This document shows, piece by piece, positions 3,690 through 29,278 of a stretch of DNA of 32,000 nucleotides (position 1 is the first letter of the stretch; every line of letters starts with the position of its first letter). The stretch is from positions 210,001 to 242,000 of the forward strand of contig NW_008806287.1 in assembly GCF_000400465.1 (NCBI RefSeq), given 5' to 3'. The DNA is from Wallemia ichthyophaga EXF-994. Taxonomy: Eukaryota; Fungi; Basidiomycota. The translations under genes and the position numbers were made by a program. A model generated the notes under the pieces. That model was not told where the DNA came from. It saw only the letters and a program-made list of their open reading frames with translations, and searched no databases.

Positions 3690-6600
3690 TTAAGATGATA
3701 ATTGTGCTCGTCTGTAATATCACGGTTAATAACATCCTTAACGCAAAAACACCCCACTCACTCGAATACTTGCAAATATAAATATCTGTAATCGCGTAAA
3801 TTCCCTGAAATGCGTTTGAGATCTACCGAGTATAGTCCAGGTAAATTCTTAATCTTGGTCAATTTCACATCCAAGACTACTTCACCCCCACTGTCAACTT
3901 GGGTTTCTCCATATACCGTATTGTTGACATCTTCATCATTGGACACATTAGACACTCCAGCAGAAGAACTAAGATTGGTCGATTGAGATGATGATCTCTT
4001 GAACATGAGTAAACTGCGTAATCCACCTGCGCTCGACGATGAAGGTAACAGTTGAGCTTGCGATTGCTGCTGTTGTTGCTTCTTTGAAGGTCTCACACAC
4101 TTCAAATTTACCTGTCCTTCCTTCTTCACTATCAATCCGAGATTCTTAGTAATTACCTTCTTCACTTCTGCCATTACAACTGATGGTGGTAAACCTGTTA
4201 ATGCGTTTTGATCGACGGTACCTGTGTGGGTGTCCATAGCATCTTCAGAAACTGGCTTAATTTGATTTTGCTGTGCTCCACCATTTGCTCCAGCAGTTGA
4301 TGGTCTCGTTTTCAACGTAGCTGGTGGAGGTGTTGATTGAGGGGGTGCTTGAGATGGCGTTTGAGGTGACTGAGAAGGTAAATGTGACGAACTACTCTGT
4401 TGAGCTGCAACAGTAACTGATTGCGTTTGTGATTGAGTTTGTGATTGCGTCTGTGATTGCGTCTGCGTCTGCATCTGCGTTGTTCCTGTCGACTGTACAA
4501 CATCTCCACCAGCCTTAGCCAAGCCTTTATTACGGAACCAATTCATAACAGACTTGGCACGACTAGATGATCCTTTATGCGAATTTACTTGGTTTGATCC
4601 ATCAAATGTCGTGCCAGCGACATTTGTAAAGGTTCCTGAAGGTGGTGATGTGGCTGATATCTGACTCGTCGGTTTGGAAGAGTTTGATGATAAAAATGCT
4701 GCTGATGTTTTACGTTCTCTCTTCGTTGTGTCTTTATTTTCATCGTTTACTTTATATTGGTTTGAAGATTTGCGTTCTTTCGATGAACTTTTACCAAATG
4801 GTTCGACCATCATTGATAGTGCCTTTCTACGACTACTTGCACTTCCACTAACACCACCTGATGTAGGTGATGACTTTTTACCAGAGTCTTTGGAATGTGA
4901 AGAGGCATTACCACCAGACGAACGATTGGACGATAACATTGACTTATTTTCGTCATCGTTTTGTTTATTCATCATTTTGAGTGCACCCGAACTGATAGGT
5001 GGTTTGCTTTGCTTGTTGGTGTTGATGTGGTGAATGCTACTGCTATTCTCCTTATCCTTATCATTCTCTTTGCTGATATCATTGTTATTGGTATCACTGA
5101 CATTGTCAGATGGTTTATCCGTTGAAGCCATGTTTCCGGTTGATAGAGCTTTGTTTGAAGGAGATTTATGAGGCTCGTGAGTCTCATGAGACTCACGAAT
5201 CTCTGTATCCTCACGAGACTCAATATCAGTCTTGACCTTTTTATTGGAAATGTCATGTGATAAAGGTAATGGAACGCTATTAATGATTGCAGGTTGAGCT
5301 AATTGCGCTTCTTCTGCGGCGTTTAATGATGGCGATGGTATTTGATTGTTAGATGGAGGAGTAATTGGTAATTGCTCATTTTTGGATAACTTTGTGGTAT
5401 CAATTTGCGTGGACTTTGTGTTTTGGTTGTCATCCTGTTGATTCTCATACTCAACTTGAATAGTGTGTCTTTGAATATTTGGATTCCTTTTACCAGATGG
5501 GTTATTGTGAGAATGAGATTGAGTGATAGTATCAGGAGCGTCTCTCTTTTTACTTGTAGAATGATCAATTTCATTTTGTTGTTGGTATTCGAGGTACTCA
5601 TTCGCAGCATCTTGATTAGCTCTTTGAAGATAGTCAAAGGGTGACAAAGTTGAAGAGTTTGAAGTTGGTATACCCATAGCAGATTGATGACGTGCACCTT
5701 TTGAAGTCATTGCAGGGAATAGATTAGGATCAGCTTCAGTTTGAGAGCGAATAAGTGAAGGAGATAAAGATTCCGCCTCGAAAGCTTGAAGTTGACGCTT
5801 TTGAGCCAATCGTTTTGCGTTTAAGAGGTCTTGTGAGAGTTGCTCCCATTGAACAACGGATCTATCGAATAAGTGGGAGTAAGATTTCAACCAAGGGTGA
5901 GACATGATTTCTTCAACAGAGCAACGCTTAGTTGGATCAGGAACAAGCATCATTGAGAGTAAATGACGAGCTTGAGGGGAGACAAAGTCAGGAAAAGTGA
6001 GAGGGGTTGAGACAATGTATTTGTAGAGGAGATTGATGTTATCACCTTCAGGGTTTTGAGGGTCATCATCGAAAGGAAGGTAACCAGCTAACATAGCGTA
6101 TAAGATGACACCACAACTCCAAATGTCAACAGCGCTTCCAACGTATAAACCATCAGAGATGACTAATTCAGGAGCAGCGTAGCAAGGGGAACCACAAGAA
6201 GTAGCCATGAGGTCATCTACACGGTGCTCAAAGCGATTAGCGAAGCCAAAGTCAGTGATGATGATATTTCTGCCCCTATCGAGAAGTAAATTTTCCAACT
6301 TTAAGTCACGATGAATAACTTTCTTATTGTGAAGGTAGTGAACGCCGGAGATTAATTGAGCGAACAATCTACAAGCGTCACGTTCTTTGAGGTATTTATG
6401 ACGTAGGATGAAATCGAAGAGTTCACCACCTGGAGCGTACTCGAGGACGATGCCAATGTACTTTTCAGTTTCAATAACATCGTATAATCCAACGATGTGA
6501 GGGTGGTTAACGGATCTCAGAACTAAAATTTCACGTTCAACTTTGGATAATCTTGATTTATCAGAGACGGAGTTTCTTCTAATGAGTTTGACAGCGACTT

Positions 6601-6823
6601 GTTCACCGAATTGAGAGTGGAGACCGAGTTTAACTTTACCGAATTCGCCTTCTCCTGTATTTTGAGGGTTAGAATAGAGTATAATCCAAGTAAATACCAA
6701 CCCACCTAACGTATTCAATAGTAAGTAAGGACCAAAGAATATTTTCTGTCTCCTTGGGTGTAGCTTGAAGTATTCCAAGGCTAAAGGGTGGTTTAGGGAG
6801 TTGTTTAAATTAATTTGTGACAT
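3690..6823 (-). CDS. KIN4: Kin4/Ppk1-like CAMK-family Ser/Thr kinase, about 1010 aa, long low-complexity linker and KA1-like C-terminus; introns 6655-6705 and 3712-3761
   Basis: FGPYLLLNTLG|EGEFGKVKLG, HRDLKLEN, DFGFAN, TSCGSPCYAAPE, LPFDDDPQNPEGDNINLLYKYI. Removing a 51-nt GTGGGT...CTAAC...CAG intron restores GxGxxG. A terminal intron (GA|GTGAGT...CAG) gives the end FERAQLSS*. Confidence 0.9.
4419..4480. repeat. 12-bp minisatellite in kinase CDS encoding (QTQS)n
   Basis: About 4-5 imperfect copies of GATTGCGTYTGT. Confidence 0.8.
5175..5198. repeat. Perfect 24-bp palindrome in kinase CDS
   Basis: TCGTGAGTCTCA|TGAGACTCACGA equals its own reverse complement. Confidence 0.95.
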
Positions 6824-13204: not shown

Positions 13205-14623
13205 ATGACATACCAACTCCCAGAAGGAATCCCGCAGACATCCCCAAAGGATACCAACAGCTTCGCATATGCAAGTGTCGTGCGTAGATGGCCTTCCATT
13301 ATCACAAACGTTATCGACTCTGTCTACCAATCAAACGCGCTCGATAGGAGCGCCTCCGACGACAAGCTCCAAGACGGTAAAGCCATCATCCAGCAATTGT
13401 CCAAACTGCGCCATGAGATGGGCAGGGACCAGCCTTTATCGTGCGTAATGGCCCATTCACGCGTCATACACCTAACTTGACGCACCAGCGACATTGAAGA
13501 CACTAGCGCTGCCAACACTCATATTTACAACGATGAGCTTAGAGTGCTCGAGAAACACTCGGATAACACGTGGTTCACCGCCCCTTGGCTTTTCGCTGAA
13601 TGCTACATGTACGCAAGAATAAGGAGCTACTTCAGCAACAGCACCTACTTCCAGCAATACGATCCTTTCAAGAAATCTAAAGACGATACTTTCAAATCAT
13701 CAAAAGCCTCAGTTTTCCAATTGGCGAGGGCTCAGCAGCAGCTCATCACAAACACCACAAAACCAACACATGTCGACGAGAGCATCGAGATTATGTTTCT
13801 AGAGATGCTCCAGATGTGCTTGTGGGGAAACGCAACTGACTTGAGTCTATTGGTTGATCTCGATTACGCCGATGTACAGAAATTACAAGCTGTTGGAAAG
13901 AAGGCGCTGGAGGAAAGCTTCAAGAAGATTATCAAGAACGACATACCACGTTTGTGGCAGTATATCTCCACTAAACGCGGTGGCAGAATCGATTTCGTCC
14001 TCGATAACGCAGGCTACGAGCTCTACACTGACCTGATTCTCGCCGATTACTTGGTGAACTGCACTCCGTTCGCTGACACGGTCGTCTTCCACCCGAAGAC
14101 AATCCCATGGTTTGTTTCTGACGTGCTGCCGGCGGATACACCTGCGCTTCTCAACCAGCTCCTCAACGCCAAAGACTTCTTCGGCGAAGACAGCCAGGAG
14201 GTTGTCGACCTGGGCGAGAGGTGGAAGAAGATGTTCGATGACGGCACGTTCAAGATGTCGGTCCCAGCTGATTACAAACTAGGCACACCCTCGAACGCCG
14301 ACTTTTGGTGCACGCCTTACAGCTACCCCCAAATGCCTGACAAGGCCGCCAGCTTGGTAAGCGACCTGCAGAAGTCTAACCTCGTTATATTCAAGGGTGA
14401 TCTCAACTACCGCAAGCTGACGTCGGACGCGCTGTGGGACCCGACTACGCCGTTCCAGACCGCCCTCGGCCCGCTTGCCGGCCAATTCCCTCTCCTCAGT
14501 CTGCGCACGAACAAGGCAGATGTCATCGTCGGCTTGGAGAGGGACGTCGTCGACACCATGCAGAGGGAGCACCCGGACTACCGCATCAGCGGTAAGTTTG
14601 CAGTCGTCTCATTTGTCTGTTGA
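13205..14623 (+). CDS. ARMT1: DUF89/ARMT1-type damage-control metal-dependent phosphatase (YMR027W-like), 456 aa, 1 intron (13441-13488)
   Basis: RRWPSII, WFTAPWLFAECYMY, LWGNATDLSL, VLDNAGYELYTD, KGDLNYRKL motifs; GTGCGT...CTAAC...CAG intron joins in frame. Confidence 0.92.
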
Positions 14624-14934
14624 TATATGCTATATGTACTTTCTCTTGGATTGCGGTGCGTTTGTGGCATGTGAAAAGCCGTGCATCACCAGCAAATGCC
14701 CGCTCGCTGTCTGCTGTTGATTTCTGAAATTGGACCACGGAAAATCTTTTAAATCGTGACAAGTCTTGCGATAATTCTTCTTGGATGATGTTGACGATAA
14801 CGTTACTCCTGACAACTCTGATCTTCCTAGTGTTATTATTGTGTATTCAAATTTTATATGCACTTTTTCCGATCTCGCGGCCCCACTTAACATATCTCGC
14901 GCCACTTACCTCATCTCTGAGAGATAACATCATT

Positions 14935-17217
14935 ATGCCAAAAGAAAATCCGCTGAATAAACAACTGAAAGATGACAGAGAGGGCCTGCTCGCTGGAGTT
15001 AGTGCTGCAATGGCTGGTACCGAAAAAATCACTAGTGTTCCTGCCAATGGCTTTAGTGCGAAGGTGGAGATGAAATCAGGCGGTTTAAAGCTGATTTTAT
15101 GAAATGGTTCACTGATATTCATCAGCCGGTGCACATATCTGAAACCCGGTCTTCCCCTTTTGACGACATAAGCGGTTCGGAAGAGTCCATTTCGTCTTTG
15201 TTAAATGTGCTTGGCTGCTATATCAGTATGAAAGCAGAGCACACTAAAGTTATACACCCTTCCGAAGCCCCAAACAAGCGGGTGAAGTATTCAACGTTCA
15301 TCAGCTGGGCAATAACTGTCGTAAAGCTGTCGAGAATGAGTTTAAGGCAAGAAAAATTACACCTTCAGACATAATCAGTGGTTCTTCAAATGACCTAAAG
15401 GACGGTTTACGCTTTCGTTTAATAGATGACTGCAAGATCCAGTGAAAATACCTAGAGTTGAATAGCCACCCACCCACGAGACAATCCTACAGAAAGCTCG
15501 AGTTCATCAAGTGTGTCGAAAGTCTTTTGTCCAGGCCATTCGATAGAAGTCAAAGTTCCAGTCACAAACTTGTCACACTTTTCGCCCTTCTCATCGTTTC
15601 TAACTTTGGGTTGCGCAAAGATAGCCTAAGAAACATGCGCTTTGACGATTCTAAATTAATGACCATGGGCGAACTCAAATAGGAAGTAACCAATTATATA
15701 ACCACGCTAAAGGGCCAAGAGAGGCGAGCAATCGACGTACGGCAAAAGGCATGCGGATTCGTCGCTAAAGAGATCCAAGATGTACAATTCAAGTTATTTC
15801 CAGTCGCATTACCCTTTTTATACTTTATGGCGGTTTGTCAGCCACACTGAAAGACACAAGGGAGGTGCCCATAACTTTGCTATCCGACTTCTTGACACAC
15901 ATCGACATTCCTTATTTGAATGCACATCGCACAATTATATCCATTCAAAGCAATATATCAAGGCCGTGACGAAAATTTATGTTCCAAACAATGTCGCGAT
16001 GGGATCTGGTGCAATAATCAGCAGGCTCAATACTGTCTACCAACAGGTAGGGCTTCCGACAGGTGGAACTTACCCGTGGTGGTACGCAGTGGGTGACAAG
16101 GCACGTCTTGCTGGAAGGGAGTTCCAAGCCGATATTCTTGGTCATGGAATGTCATATACTGGTACGCAAAGCTACACTAGAGGTGAATCAATGAACTATA
16201 CCAATATCTGCAATTATAGCTGACAAGAATGATGTTATCGAGGAGGGGCAAAGGTTGGCTTAATGGGTCAAGGCTGCGTATTGGGTTTCAACAGAGCTCA
16301 CCTCTACCGCAATAGCTTCCACTATGAGGAAAGATAGGAATCCTTTCCAGCTCGACAAGGAGAAATTGGATATACAATCACTCACTGCTTGCAAAAATAG
16401 CGAGCGAGTGCAGCAAGCTTTCAGGTTACATAATCAATTCATAAACACACCAAAAGCAAAGATTTGAGTATTGAAGAAGGAAAACAATTTGAAACGCTTA
16501 AGGACAGATTGCGTTCCTCAAAATGAGCTGAGAAGGAGAAAATCAAGAACTCCAGCAGAGGAAAATCAAGAACCTACTCAAGCTTCTAGCAATTGAGGGA
16601 ACTTTCGATGAGAAGAGGCAAGCAAAAGAAACTATATGTTCAGCAAACTTATATTCTATTGGAAATGAAGAAACAGAAGCAGCGAGAATTCGAATCGATG
16701 CTGCTTCAACCAGCGACAGACCTGCTGATCTCATCAAAACACCCGAACTTGAAGATCAATTCGTCGAGTACAAGGATGAGGAGGAAGACGAGTTTTATGC
16801 TGCTGCAAAAGGCTTGACAGATGATGTGGCAATCAACAGGATGGCAATCGTTTTCCAACTGTAAAGCTCAATTGCAGCGAACGACATCATCACAGGAATG
16901 TTGAACCTAATGGTAGATTATAATGATTGTTTATATTGCCAGAATATAGTGAGTATGATATTTACTCTCACTAGGCATTTGAATAACGTTTCAATTTGCA
17001 GAATAAGGAGATTAGCTTCTGCAATGTTAGCGTTGCCCGTAAACACTTGAAGAACAAGCACGCTGAAGAATACGCTAAGTTTTTGGAGGGGAACATGGAA
17101 GAATTACTGAATACGATAATCTTTGAGAAGTTGCACGACATTTGCCAATCATCTCACGAAGGTATTCAGCGTCTTTGTGCCGTGACAAATCAGGATATCA
17201 TCGACTTTTGCTCATGA
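14935..17217 (+). pseudogene. Decayed tyrosine recombinase (DUF3435/Starship-captain- or Crypton-like) with C-terminal C2H2 zinc finger; mobile-element relic
   Basis: Stitched frames give box I FGLRKDSLRNMRFDD (R 15614-16), TLKG (K 15710-12), box II TYPWWYA...DILGHGMSYTGTQSY (H 16143-45, Y 16173-75), then RKDRNPFQL and CLYC...HLKNKH across a 53-nt intron (16949-17001). At least 5 in-frame stops (15443, 15680, 16261, 16524, 16862) and about 5 frame changes. Confidence 0.75.
16538..16573 (+). repeat. Tandem duplication (GAAAATCAAGAAC twice, 23-nt period) at a frameshift in the recombinase relic
   Basis: Copies at 16538-16550 and 16561-16573; the reconstructed reading frame changes across them. 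Confidence 0.7.
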
Positions 17218-17741
17218 TATCGTTCTCATTATCTTCTTGCTAGCTGCTTTGTTGTTAATATTTCAAATGTATATCTTCATTTACAAACGCCGCATGATAT
17301 TCGTATCAGCTCTAGATACGTAGTGGGGAATTGTAGAATTGTAGATAAGATGAGAAAAATCTTGAAGTGTATGTTGAATTCAGCGATAAATGCAAAATCT
17401 GCGATAGTGTGCAGAGCTTGCGCTCATCTCCGGCGACCATCTCTCGCACCTTTTTTGTTTTTTTATGATGCGGATGCAGATGTATGCATCAGTGAGGACC
17501 TTAAAATCAAGACCCGTATGAGAGAAGTCGTGATAGTAAGGGCTCGAGCGAGGCAATATCTAGCGGTAGTAGGGTGCTATTGGATCCTAACAGTATCGTT
17601 GCTTTGGTGCTGTGCGCGGTGCCGAACGGGTTTATGAAGCGAGGGCCAAAGTGCATTGGCTGCAATGTCAAATGCTTCAAATTAACAGGAAATAAGCTCG
17701 CAGGCTGCTACATTCCCTATAAGCACCCTACTGCTACTGGG

Positions 17742-18422
17742 TTAAGCTGTTTGTTGATCAAAGATGTTGTTGGTGATGGCGTTGTTCTTGCTGCGAAGGC
17801 CGAGTCCGCCAAGATGCTCACTGCGCTCATCAGACACCTTACCCAGGTAGACCCCTCTGTCCTCGATTGGTTGCTTGTACTTGACAGCACTCACGATGTC
17901 CAGAAGTATTCCAGCAAGAAGGCGCTTTGCGAGGAAAAGCAGAATGTGGTGATTGCTACCTTTACTGCTTTTCCTTATTGCCTGGCTCAACGACGATCGC
18001 GCTGGTGTTGCTACCTCCACTAAGGTTTTATTCCAGCTATGTACTCTGCGCGCACACGCGCCAAAGGTCCGACCACCTTACTTCCTGTGGATGATATGGT
18101 GTTTATGGGGCGATGGCGGTGTGGTTGGTGCAGTACGCACATGGTATCTTGATTGCTGCACTGTCGTGTTCCTATGTGTCTGTGCGTGTCCACCGGCGTG
18201 TGCTTTGGATGCCCGATCAGCGAGTGCATTTTCTGGTACTGCTGCGCAACAGACGCTCCGGCACAACGCTAGTCTCCGCACACTTACGGGGTGGTACATA
18301 ACTACCGACGAACTCTTGCGCATATGTGACGGTGCTGAGGGATAGATAGATAGAAATCATAATATATAGTCTAAAGCGTTACAACGATTAGTAATCTTCG
18401 CCTATCAATACTTCTTGCGCAT
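17742..18422 (-). CDS. Hypothetical secreted His/Pro-rich orphan protein, 182 aa, 4 exons
   Basis: Exons 18422-18412, 18370-18288, 18241-18082, 18036-17742. Three GT-AG introns (41, 46, 45 nt) join in frame. Signal-peptide-like start MRKKLYIMISIYLSLSTVTYA-QEF; N-glycosylation sequons NTT and NKT. No recognised family. Confidence 0.5.
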
Positions 18423-18745
18423 TGAAAGCTGACGATTGTATTGACTCAAAGGCGTGCGGTTCTTGGCACGTGTGCCGTAAATTGGAAAGTAGCTACGTGA
18501 AACTACCGGAGGCGAGCGAGTTGGTGCTGAGCTGGTTCAGCGCCTCTATCCGCTCCCTTCGTGGCGCAACGGGAACAAAGCCTGTCCAAAAGCCGCTCCC
18601 GGAGCAAACGTCCGACCGCAGGCAAAAACACTGCGCCTCCCACAGATGCTAATGCGAGCTTCCCGCTGCGCCGCCGCGCACCTGGATTGTCAAATCTCAT
18701 CCGTTTTTTCAATTATGATTGTGACCGACATGGCGGCCTTTATAA

Positions 18746-18839
18746 GTCAGGATGGCCGAGCGGTTAAGGCGCTTGACTTGAATGTCTGAGACGTTATCAA
18801 GTACCATTTGGTGCGTAGGTTCGAATCCTGCTCCTGACG
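18746..18839 (+). tRNA. tRNA-Ser(UGA) with 13-nt canonical intron (18783-18795)
   Basis: Acceptor stem GTCAGGA/TCCTGAC with G73; A-box TGGCCGAGCGG; anticodon stem CTTGA/TCAAG with loop CT-TGA-A-[intron]-A; long variable arm; T-arm GTAGG-TTCGAAT-CCTGC; T5 terminator at 18843-18847. Confidence 0.96.
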
Positions 18840-19634
18840 AACTTTTTATTTTGTCGTTTTAGCGACCGCTAGTGTTACGGCAGGGAGACAGGCAGGCAGG
18901 TTTGAGTATGCCTGTAATTAGTGCGCAACAGCTGGCATCCAGAAGAGTGCTTTTGACAGGAGGCACAGTTTTTCACCCCCAATATGACGCGCGCGGGGAT
19001 CTTCTTCTCGAACAGCGAAGACGTCGGCGACGGCGGGGCTTGTGCAGCCCGCCAGTCCTGCAATTGGGCACAGCTCTCTGAGTCTTCGCAGAGCAAGCTG
19101 CACGGTTTGAGTACGGGGGTGTCGCCTGTGGCACTTTCGTAATTAACCAGTGGTACAAACGTGAGCTAGAGTGGGAAAAGTAACAGTATTGTAAGGAGTG
19201 CGATGCATCGTATTGTTTGCGCAGTGCATTTGGCGGTAATTGACGTGTGTGCGTGTGCTTGTGTGCGAGAAGACACCGTGCAAAACTTCACGAGTCAGCA
19301 GGCAGGCAATGTGGGATGGCGCAACACGCACACGTACACACACAGATACGCCTTTCAAAGCCTCCTCTCACAGCCACATGAAATAAAAAATCAGCCACTT
19401 AAAACCGCGCAAACCTTCTTGTTTCCCTCCATGATACAATATTCGCCTTTATACTGTTGCGTATGCGAACAATGCATAGGACAACGGGAAACGGGGTGAT
19501 AGAGAGACAGCTGGGGGTGCTGCTGCAGACATGGCCCAGTGCCACGCCTGCGAGCAGCCCCAGCGACAAGCCTAGAACTGCAATGTGCTGCTAATTTTGT
19601 AGACGTTGATTTGAAATGATTCATTATACAATTA

Positions 19635-28931: not shown

Positions 28932-29278
28932 AACAACCGCATCCAGTACTGACCAAAAGTAAGCCCCATTCTGTTGCCATTGAAATGACCAGCAAAATAC
29001 CTTTGATAGTTGACTATCTAATGACAGACTGCAAACACACAGCTCTTGTCTTCGCTGGTGAGTGAATGCTTTCTGCCTTTCATCGGGAGTGTTTGGTGTG
29101 TCTCCCACTGCAGATCACAGGAGCCATCACCCCACTCCCCACCACACCATCGTCAAAAGACGTGCTCTCCGGCGTGCGTAGGTCCGGGGACTTTCCCCAC
29201 AGCTGTCGTCGCAGCAGAACTTGTCTACTCGCTTGTATTGCTGCGTTATGCTGCTTTTCGTCACTGGATGCGGTTGTT
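28932..29278 (-). ncRNA. NME1: RNase MRP RNA (about 347 nt)
   Basis: Perfect 16-bp terminal helix P1 (29263-29278 with 28932-28947), extended by GACGAAAAG/CTTTTGGTC. P2 CAGCA/TGCTG; P3 CGCAGCA/TGCTGCG; CR-I GGGGAAAGTCCCCGGACCT (29198-29180); GARAR-like GGAGAG (29170-29165); CR-IV-like ATAGTCA (29017-29011); P19 hairpin (28989-28976); CR-V ACAGAATGGGGCTTACT (28974-28958), completing P4 AAGTCCCC/GGGGCTT. Confidence 0.92.

What the first reader, a model, noticed from the sequence alone, without database searches (positions are those of the whole stretch)
14935..17217. Fossil DUF3435/Starship-captain-like tyrosine recombinase in a compact basidiomycete genome
Seen in the sequence: fragments across alternating frames rebuild a roughly 740-codon protein with tyrosine-recombinase catalytic order R (GLRKDSL..MRFDD), K (TLKG), YxxW at the H/Y-x-x-R position (TGG, one substitution from Arg CGG), LGH and Y. 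These are followed by an RKDRNPFQL segment and an intron-split C2H2 finger. Established knowledge: DUF3435 recombinases are the captains of Starship cargo transposons, described mainly in Pezizomycotina, and Cryptons are fungal DNA transposons with a tyrosine recombinase. Inference: this is a dead member of such a family; intact relatives might define an undescribed basidiomycete YR element.
Basis: partly seen in the sequence, partly recalled or inferred. Interest (0 to 1): 0.8.

Follow-up and report, generated by a model that had tools for sequence, protein, structure and literature searches.

The report
Dead orphan gene with recombinase-like motifs
A 2.3 kb stretch of the compact Wallemia ichthyophaga genome is a real, species-wide dead gene whose motifs resemble a tyrosine recombinase, but no search links it to Starship captains, Cryptons or any other known protein, so it is a curiosity and not a new transposon family.

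Summary
The window is Wallemia ichthyophaga EXF-994 (100% identical to KE007237.1).

**What is confirmed.** Positions 14935-17217 (+) hold the remains of one ORF of about 740 codons.
- The + strand needs 12 frame or stop repairs, against 21.8±2.8 in shuffles and 20 on the - strand.
- The same lesions occur in three W. ichthyophaga lineages.
- It evolves neutrally: pN/pS 0.77, against 0.16 for the neighbouring ARMT1 gene.
- It is missing from the orthologous ARMT1-tRNA spacer of W. mellicola (1.5 kb there, 4.1 kb here).

**What is not supported.** The family assignment fails.
- Pfam gives no hit for the stitched protein or its pieces. That covers DUF3435, NDC10_II (CryptonF), DUF3504 and Phage_integrase. 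PHROGs, NCBIfam and PDB sequences also give nothing.
- Searches of 5.8 and 1.84 billion proteins, metagenomes, viral contigs and phages found only the locus itself.
- Decay is light (about 6% per site). A real CryptonF recombinase degraded by 30% still scores 83 bits, so decay does not explain the silence.

**What remains.** Two independent recombinase profiles rank piece 15446-15679 first of 1450, aligned on the Arg-I box (about 9 bits). A colinear box II has the correct spacing. This is motif-level evidence only.

**Verdict.** A fixed orphan pseudogene, possibly a relic of a very divergent recombinase. It is not a demonstrable Starship captain or Crypton.

The parts
14935..17217 (+). Decayed ORF of about 740 codons (unitary pseudogene): 6 frameshifts, 5 in-frame stops and one putative intron
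   Evidence: The same lesions occur in L001, L008 and L009. pN/pS is 0.77.
15446..15679 (+). Stop-free piece carrying the Arg-I-like box (GLRKDSLRNMRFDD, 15608-15649)
   Evidence: Ranked first of 1450 six-frame pieces by the CryptonF profile (9.8 bits) and by an E. coli/phage YR profile (8.9 bits). Shuffles reached the observed score 0/2000 and 1/2000 times.
15701..15727 (+). TTLKGQERR, the candidate beta-hairpin Lys, 32 residues after the candidate Arg I
   Evidence: Sequence. Not aligned Lys-to-Lys by hhalign.
16068..16094 (+). TYPWWYAVG: Tyr at the His-I position and Trp (TGG, 16080-16082) at the Arg-II position
   Evidence: Identical in all three lineages.
16134..16181 (+). ILGHGMSYTGTQSYTR: candidate His-II and nucleophile Tyr. 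Trp (Arg-II position) to His is 21 residues, His to Tyr is 10, and Tyr (His-I position) to nucleophile Tyr is 34.
   Evidence: Sequence. Aligned to 'elLgH.anlstvriYtr' of the YR profile, but the score is not significant (-1.0 bits; 153/2000 shuffles equal or better).
16327..16353 (+). RKDRNPFQL segment
   Evidence: Present. No family match.
16531..16573 (+). 23-nt tandem duplication; one copy is absent in lineage L008 (indel polymorphism)
16949..17001 (+). Putative 53-nt spliceosomal intron (GTGAGT...CAG) joining frame 3 to frame 2
   Evidence: Sequence. The species' mean intron length is 61 bp (PMC3849046). Not verified with RNA data.
16925..17061 (+). C2H2-like finger: CxxC in the first exon and HxxxxH in the second. 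The unspliced reading gives an alternative CxxC-x12-H.
   Evidence: Only a weak Pfam zf-C2H2_2 hit, E=0.093, 13.4 bits against a cut-off of 26.9.
13205..14623 (+). Upstream neighbour: ARMT1/DUF89 damage-control phosphatase gene (intact)
   Evidence: Pfam 1.9e-71. 99% identical to W. ichthyophaga E3P94_01884.
18746..18839 (+). Downstream anchor: tRNA gene, conserved in W. mellicola, which delimits the enlarged spacer
   Evidence: Rfam 51.4 bits; ARAGORN; 82% identity to W. mellicola.

Best explanation
This is a non-functional unitary pseudogene, fixed in Wallemia ichthyophaga. It is the remains of one gene of about 740 codons containing one intron. The gene sits in the ARMT1-tRNA spacer, which is 2.6 kb longer here than in W. 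mellicola. The gene was inactivated fairly recently, with about 6% neutral change per site. The lesions are 6 frameshifts and 5 stops, plus (if it was a recombinase) Trp in place of catalytic Arg II. It now drifts neutrally.

Its ancestor had no detectable relative in any public collection searched. The most likely identity, inferred and not shown, is the sole gene of a lineage-restricted mobile or foreign element. That gene would have encoded a very divergent tyrosine-recombinase-type DNA-binding protein: a core-binding N-terminus, a catalytic domain with R...K...Y-x-x-(R>W)...H...Y, and a basic/acidic tail with a C2H2-like finger.

It is not a recognisable DUF3435 captain or Crypton. It does nothing today except seed wrong gene models (J056_001268, and the C-terminus of E3P94_01884).

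Shown: pseudogene status, fixation, neutrality, absence from the W. mellicola locus, and absence of homologues. Inferred: insertion rather than loss elsewhere, recombinase identity, and mobility.
For: **Pseudogene.**
- 12 disruptions on the + strand, against 21.8±2.8 in shuffles and 20 on the - strand.
- Identical lesions in the reference (100% identity), in strain GCA_004917845 (7 SNPs, no indels) and in a 97%-identical lineage (L008).
- Divergence in the fossil is 3.6% of alignment columns (indel columns counted), close to the downstream intergenic spacer at 2.9%, against 0.76% in ARMT1.
- pN/pS is 0.77, against 0.16 for ARMT1.

**Lineage restriction.**
- The W. mellicola ARMT1-tRNA spacer is 1492 nt, against 4122 nt here, with no blastn or tblastx similarity.
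- There is none in the 880 nt after ARMT1 in the relative whose ARMT1 is 88% identical.

**Light decay.** Five in-frame stops fit about 0.06 substitutions per site.

**Recombinase-like signal.**
- The CryptonF profile (9 sequences from PMC3212892 supplement 3) and an independent E. coli/phage YR profile both rank 15446-15679 first of 1450 six-frame pieces. Both align it on the catalytic Arg-I box (9.8 and 8.9 bits; shuffles 0/2000 and 1/2000).
- A colinear [HY]xx[RW]-x(17-26)-[LIVMA][GA][HW]-x(8-11)-Y pattern downstream occurs in about 0.1% of shuffles.
- The His-I to nucleophile spacing of 34 matches lambda Int and is one short of the 35 in XerD/XerC, Cre (alignment) and HhpA (Y381 to Y416).
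- Tyr at the His-I position is known in the functional captain HhpA (Y381; PMC10104507).
Against: There is no statistically supported homology to any recombinase.
- Pfam gives nothing at E<=10 for the pieces or the stitched protein. PHROGs and NCBIfam give nothing. PDB sequences give no recombinase. tblastn against 50,697 phage genomes gives nothing at E<=10.
- Box II is not significant against either profile.
- hhalign against CryptonF scores 19.5, against 15.8±2.6 in shuffles, with 12/120 equal or better.
- At about 9 bits, roughly 3 Arg-I-like pieces are expected by chance per 9.6 Mb genome.
- The Lys to His-I spacing (121 residues) is longer than in the YRs compared.
- There are no terminal repeats (longest 8 nt, as in shuffles). 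There is no second copy and no empty site with defined ends.
Confidence: 0.45

Rival explanations
1. This is the pseudogene of a lineage-specific host or foreign gene that was never a recombinase. The R/K/YxxW/LGH/Y constellation is a chance pattern picked out by eye.
For: Every homology search is empty. Box II and hhalign are at noise level. The six-frame background contains unrelated pieces at 8.6 and 7.3 bits. The strict HxxR pattern is not met.
Against: Two independent profiles pick the same piece and the same catalytic box. Box II is colinear with canonical spacings, and the chance of that pattern is about 1e-3 given box I. An orphan gene of 740 codons is itself unusual.
Confidence: 0.4
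2. One reading: a fossil DUF3435 (Starship-captain family) recombinase.
For: Tyr at the His-I position, as in HhpA (PMC10104507). A C-terminal zinc-finger-like segment; the Enterprise captain is reported to carry a zinc finger (PMC11162782). A few captain-family YRs are reported in Basidiomycota (PMC11162782).
Against: There is no PF11917 hit at E<=10 for the stitched protein or its pieces, although only about 13% of residues should have changed. Degraded real YRs remain detectable. There is no cargo, no DR/TIR and only a 2.6 kb footprint. No relatives appear among 5.8 and 1.84 billion proteins, which include fungal proteomes.
Confidence: 0.07
3. A fossil CryptonF-type element.
For: The best weak hit is to the CryptonF profile and extends about 35 residues upstream of Arg I. 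The hhalign greedy alignment runs in order through the Arg-I box, the box II residues and the nucleophile Tyr, but it puts the candidate Lys four positions off the CryptonF GKT Lys. Cryptons lack TIRs (PMC13465315).
Against: Real CryptonF YRs hit Pfam NDC10_II at 179-273 bits, and still at 83 bits after 30% degradation, whereas the fossil gives nothing. There is no GCR1_C-type C-terminal domain. hhalign is not significant.
Confidence: 0.04
4. The annotated short genes made from its pieces (J056_001268, 152 aa; the C-terminal exon of E3P94_01884) are genuine functional genes salvaged from the relic.
For: Two annotation pipelines produced spliced models over 16003-16184 plus 16589-16861, and over 16547-16861.
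Against: pN/pS across the stitched reading frames of the fossil is 0.77; it was not computed separately for the annotated exons. There are 8 substitutions in 273 nt of the shared exon between lineages, plus a 23-bp indel that removes the first bases of the E3P94_01884 exon and lies about 30 nt upstream of the J056_001268 exon. There are no homologues. The two models disagree with each other.
Confidence: 0.04

Closest known systems
Tyrosine recombinase superfamily (Cre, XerC/D, lambda Int; Pfam Phage_integrase PF00589)
   Same: The order of candidate residues is the same: R, K, [H>Y]xx[R>W], H, Y. The Arg-I box (fGLRkdsLrnMrFdD) aligns to tglRvsEl..l...D. The spacings are canonical: Arg II to His II 21 residues, His II to Tyr 10, and His I to Tyr 34.
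   Different: There is no significant profile or BLAST similarity. Arg II is Trp in every copy seen. The Lys to His-I spacing is about 121 residues, against 72-88. The fold is untested.
Starship captains (DUF3435, PF11917), e.g. HhpA, Kirc
   Same: A fungal protein of about 700 aa. Tyr at the His-I position, as in HhpA. A possible C-terminal zinc finger, as reported for the Enterprise captain.
   Different: No PF11917 hit. No cargo, no direct or inverted terminal repeats, single copy, 2.6 kb footprint. The host is in Wallemiomycetes, whereas Starships are essentially confined to Pezizomycotina (PMC11162782).
CryptonF elements / Ndc10-Cbf2 (Pfam NDC10_II PF16787)
   Same: The best (weak) profile match is on the Arg-I box and the preceding helix. 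Both are small and lack TIRs. Cryptons are fungal elements.
   Different: No NDC10_II hit, although controls show one would be expected. No GCR1_C-type C-terminal domain. His II is His, not the Trp of CryptonF.
Unitary (non-processed) pseudogenes / solo TE-gene relics in compact fungal genomes
   Same: Fixed, single copy, shared lesions, neutral pN/pS, retained intron, and pieces mis-annotated as hypothetical proteins.
   Different: The parent family is unknown: no homologue appears among about 15 billion predicted proteins.

Membership tests
Pseudogene (unitary, fixed) | Multiple frame-disrupting lesions along one ancestral reading frame, beyond chance | tested here: met
   12 disruptions against 21.8±2.8 in shuffles (0/500 reached 12 or fewer); 20 on the - strand.
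Pseudogene (unitary, fixed) | Lesions shared by independent isolates, and neutral evolution | tested here: met
   Same stops and frameshifts in L001, L008 and L009. pN/pS is 0.77 against 0.16 for ARMT1.
Tyrosine recombinase superfamily | Significant sequence or profile similarity to a YR catalytic domain | tested here: not met
   Pfam, PHROGs, NCBIfam, PDB and phage tblastn are all empty. Only the Arg-I box scores about 9 bits against home-made profiles.
Tyrosine recombinase superfamily | Catalytic R-K-H-R-[H/W]-Y in order with canonical spacing | tested here: inconclusive
   R, K, Y (at the His-I position), H and Y are present with good box II spacing, but Arg II is Trp.
Tyrosine recombinase superfamily | DNA breaking-rejoining fold | not testable with these tools
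The 93-aa box II piece gave pLDDT 36.8, which is meaningless.
Starship captain (DUF3435) | Match to Pfam PF11917 | tested here: not met
   No hit at E<=10 for the pieces or the stitched protein. Decay is too light to explain this.
Starship captain (DUF3435) | First gene at the 5' end of a cargo-carrying element bounded by direct repeats, with or without TIRs | tested here: not met
   The extra DNA is only about 2.6 kb with no other gene. The longest flank repeats are 8 nt, equal to the shuffle expectation.
CryptonF | YR domain recognised by Pfam NDC10_II (positive control: CryF1_CI, CryF1_TS and CryF1_PS score 179-273 bits) | tested here: not met
   No hit. Controls. hhalign is not significant.
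CryptonF | C-terminal GCR1_C-type DNA-binding domain | tested here: not met
   No Pfam hit in the C-terminal pieces.
CryptonA / DUF3504 | Match to Pfam PF12012 | tested here: not met
Transposable element (any) | More than one copy, or polymorphic presence with defined ends | tested here: not met
   The only hits are the locus itself. It is present in all three W. ichthyophaga lineages. Whole Wallemia genomes could not be searched as DNA.
C2H2 zinc finger | Pfam zf-C2H2-type match above threshold | tested here: inconclusive
   zf-C2H2_2 E=0.093, 13.4 bits against a cut-off of 26.9, on the unspliced reading.

The most novel reading that the evidence does not exclude
The relic derives from an undescribed and very divergent family of eukaryotic tyrosine recombinases, carried by a small cargo-less element restricted to Wallemiomycetes or to an unsampled donor. 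Neither current Pfam YR models (DUF3435, NDC10_II, DUF3504, Phage_integrase) nor searches of 15 billion predicted proteins can see this family.
Probability: 0.3. Interest if true: 0.55.

Novelty: new member of a known kind. Interest (0 to 1): 0.3.

Why it matters
If the recombinase reading were right, this would be a trace of a YR element lineage in an early-branching basidiomycete class that current models miss. That bears on whether Starship- or Crypton-like recombinases are older than the Pezizomycotina.

As the evidence stands, the practical value is smaller.
- It shows that one of the few non-coding kilobases in a 9.6 Mb, 1.67%-repeat genome is a fixed dead gene.
- It flags two wrong gene models: J056_001268, and the chimeric C-terminus of E3P94_01884.
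- It gives a worked example of why motif-level recombinase calls need profile or fold support.

Tried and rejected
- **Introns in place of frameshifts.** Rejected. Adjacent frames overlap, or the only GT..AG pairs are 15-26 nt apart. Only 16949-17001 looks like an intron.
- **P0126 as a less decayed copy.** Rejected. This 206-aa Logan ORF has DNA (L010) identical to L008, and the caller read TGA as Trp.
- **P0123-P0125 as relatives.** Rejected. These hits from the 1.84-billion-protein search are repetitive bacterial surface proteins matched in many stretches.
- **Low GC as a sign of foreign origin.** Dropped. The fossil is 42.4% GC against a genome mean of 45.35% (PMC3849046), and a host kinase gene in the window is 41%.
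- **RIP-like or CpG decay.** CpG observed/expected is 0.81, against about 1.0 in the flanks. This is too weak to interpret.
- **Defining insertion ends from relatives.** The intergenic DNA of W. mellicola and of the relative whose ARMT1 is 88% identical is not alignable.
- **Terminal repeats.** None beyond chance.
- **Exact look-ups of three flanking ORFs.** All failed because the genes have introns.
- **tRNA targeting.** The relic ends 1.5 kb upstream of the tRNA, the same distance as the whole W. mellicola spacer, so no targeting claim is made.

Full report
**Identity of the window.** The flanking ORFs encode ordinary fungal genes: GAPDH, a MARK/KA1 kinase, a CUE protein, a PMT mannosyltransferase, ARMT1/DUF89, Sel1-repeat proteins and a GYF protein. 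The ARMT1 ORF (13544-14623) is 99% identical to Wallemia ichthyophaga E3P94_01884 and 80% identical to the W. mellicola orthologue. Window 14500-18900 is 100% identical to the EXF-994 reference, KE007237.1. So "compact basidiomycete" is right: the genome is 9.6 Mb with 1.67% repeats, 45.35% GC and a mean intron of 61 bp (PMC3849046).

**The observation.** The path has six frameshifts, five in-frame stops (15443 TGA, 15680 TAG, 16261 TAA, 16465 TGA, 16862 TAA) and one 53-nt GTGAGT...CAG interval (16949-17001). A least-cost path needs 12 repairs on the + strand. That compares with 20 on the - strand and 21.8±2.8 in 500 composition-preserving (first-order Markov) randomisations, none of which reached 12 or fewer. 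A long ancestral ORF on the + strand is therefore real.

**It is a fixed, neutrally drifting pseudogene.**
- Strain GCA_004917845 differs from the window by 7 SNPs and no indels within the fossil.
- A 97%-identical lineage (Logan SRR25394091, L008; also L010) carries the same lesions plus three further indels, one of them 23 bp.
- Between lineages the fossil differs at 3.6% of alignment columns (indel columns counted). The adjacent intergenic spacer differs at 2.9% and ARMT1 at 0.76%.
- In the stitched frames pN/pS is 0.77, against 0.16 for ARMT1.

**Lineage restriction.** In W. mellicola the same ARMT1 gene is followed after 1492 nt by the same tRNA gene (82% identity). Here the spacer is 4122 nt, that is 2630 nt more. 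Neither blastn nor tblastx finds any trace of the fossil in the W. mellicola spacer. The 880 nt after ARMT1 in the relative whose ARMT1 is 88% identical also lack it. Ends could not be defined: the intergenic DNA is not alignable, and the flanks share no repeat longer than 8 nt, as in shuffles.

**Homology searches.** Every route was empty.
- Pfam on eight pieces and on the stitched 769-aa and 249-aa versions: no family at E<=10, except zf-C2H2_2 at E=0.093 and DUF5806 at E=0.15, both far below their cut-offs.
- PHROGs and NCBIfam: nothing.
- PDB sequences: one spurious hit at E=0.64.
- The 5.8-billion-protein word-seeded search: nothing at E<=10, for the whole protein and for the core.
- Exhaustive HMMER of the stop-free box II piece (15942-16220) against 1.84 billion representatives: only ORFs of this same locus (P0121, P0122) and three repetitive bacterial proteins.
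- tblastn against 50,697 phage genomes: nothing at E<=10.
- Metagenome (two scans), viral and prokaryotic genome scans: nothing.

**Decay does not explain the silence.** Five in-frame stops correspond to about 0.06 substitutions per site (simulation), so roughly 13% of residues have changed. As a control, intact CryptonF recombinases taken from Kojima & Jurka's supplement (PMC3212892) hit Pfam NDC10_II at 179-273 bits. One of them, with 15% or 30% of residues randomised, 8 X inserted and six 3-residue deletions, still scores 104 and 83 bits. Only at 45% is the hit lost. The ancestor itself therefore lay outside DUF3435, NDC10_II/CryptonF, DUF3504 and Phage_integrase as Pfam models them.

**What speaks for a recombinase.**
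- A CryptonF core profile (9 sequences) run without filters gives the stitched protein 4.7 bits (shuffle maximum 3.8, 0/2000) and the box I piece 8.8 bits (0/2000). The piece is aligned on mLlRgenrrklelaDlf, the Arg-I box.
- Among 1450 six-frame pieces (93,001 aa) from the window and other Wallemia loci, piece 15446-15679 ranks first at 9.8 bits. The next pieces score 8.6 and 7.3 bits.
- An independent profile was built from FimB, FimE, XerC, XerD, IntS, IntA, lambda Int and Cre. It also ranks this piece first (8.9 bits; 1/2000 shuffles equal or better), on tglRvsEl..l...did.
- Downstream, TYPWW...ILGH...QSY gives 21 residues from the Arg-II position to His II, 10 from His II to Tyr, and 34 from His I to Tyr. 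A regex for this arrangement matches about 0.1% of shuffles.
- Tyr at the His-I position occurs in the functional captain HhpA (PMC10104507).

**What speaks against.**
- Box II does not score significantly against either profile.
- hhalign against CryptonF is at noise level: 19.5 against 15.8±2.6, with 12/120 shuffles equal or better.
- At about 9 bits, a few Arg-I-like pieces are expected per genome by chance.
- Arg II is Trp in every copy seen.
- The fold could not be tested.

**Comparison with known families.** Starships are cargo-carrying elements that begin with a DUF3435 captain and are bounded by direct repeats. They are essentially a feature of Pezizomycotina. Basidiomycetes have few captain-type YRs, and none of those sits in a delimited element (PMC11162782). 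Here there is no DUF3435 match, no cargo and no repeats. CryptonF elements have an NDC10_II-type YR and a GCR1_C-type tail, and neither is present. The object is best filed as a unitary pseudogene of an orphan gene. A recombinase origin is plausible but unproven. I put about 0.45 on a divergent YR, about 0.4 on a non-YR orphan, and about 0.1 on DUF3435 or Crypton proper.

**Verdict.** The gene is dead. The recombinase call rests on motifs only. The Starship/DUF3435 or Crypton assignment is not supported, and no intact relatives were found. Interest is modest.

Noticed in passing
window 18746-18839 (+): A tRNA gene (Rfam 51.4 bits; ARAGORN cannot decide between Ser and Phe, and it has a long extra arm or an intron). 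It is conserved at 82% in W. mellicola. Gene order shared with W. mellicola ends just downstream of it: Sel1/GYF/Complex1_30kDa here, against DUF3429/Fer2/F-box-WD40/RSN1 there.
   Followed up: partly
window 28943-29268 (-): RNase MRP RNA gene (Rfam RF00030, 61.3 bits, full-length model match).
   Followed up: no
window 16003-16184 + 16589-16861; L009 10001-10866: The reference gene J056_001268 (XP_009269103.1, 152 aa 'hypothetical protein') is spliced together from two pieces of the pseudogene, so it is probably a spurious model.
   Followed up: partly
window 13205-14590 + 16547-16861; L001 10001-13660: The strain annotation E3P94_01884 (551 aa) fuses ARMT1 to a fossil piece across a 1.96 kb 'intron'. 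The W. mellicola protein is 452 aa and the reference model is 456 aa, so this is a chimeric model.
   Followed up: partly
L010 517-1137 (Logan SRR25393946): ORF P0126 reads two TGA codons as Trp, although its DNA is identical to L008. This is a gene-caller genetic-code artefact in the protein collection, not a less decayed copy.
   Followed up: yes
window 16531-16573: A 23-nt tandem duplication (AGAAGGAGAAAATCAAGAAC / AGCAGAGGAAAATCAAGAAC). One unit is absent in lineage L008.
   Followed up: partly
window 3758-6823 (-): A MARK/KA1-type kinase gene with unusually low GC (41%) compared with its neighbours (51-58%). This shows that local GC dips are not evidence of foreign origin in this genome.
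   Followed up: no
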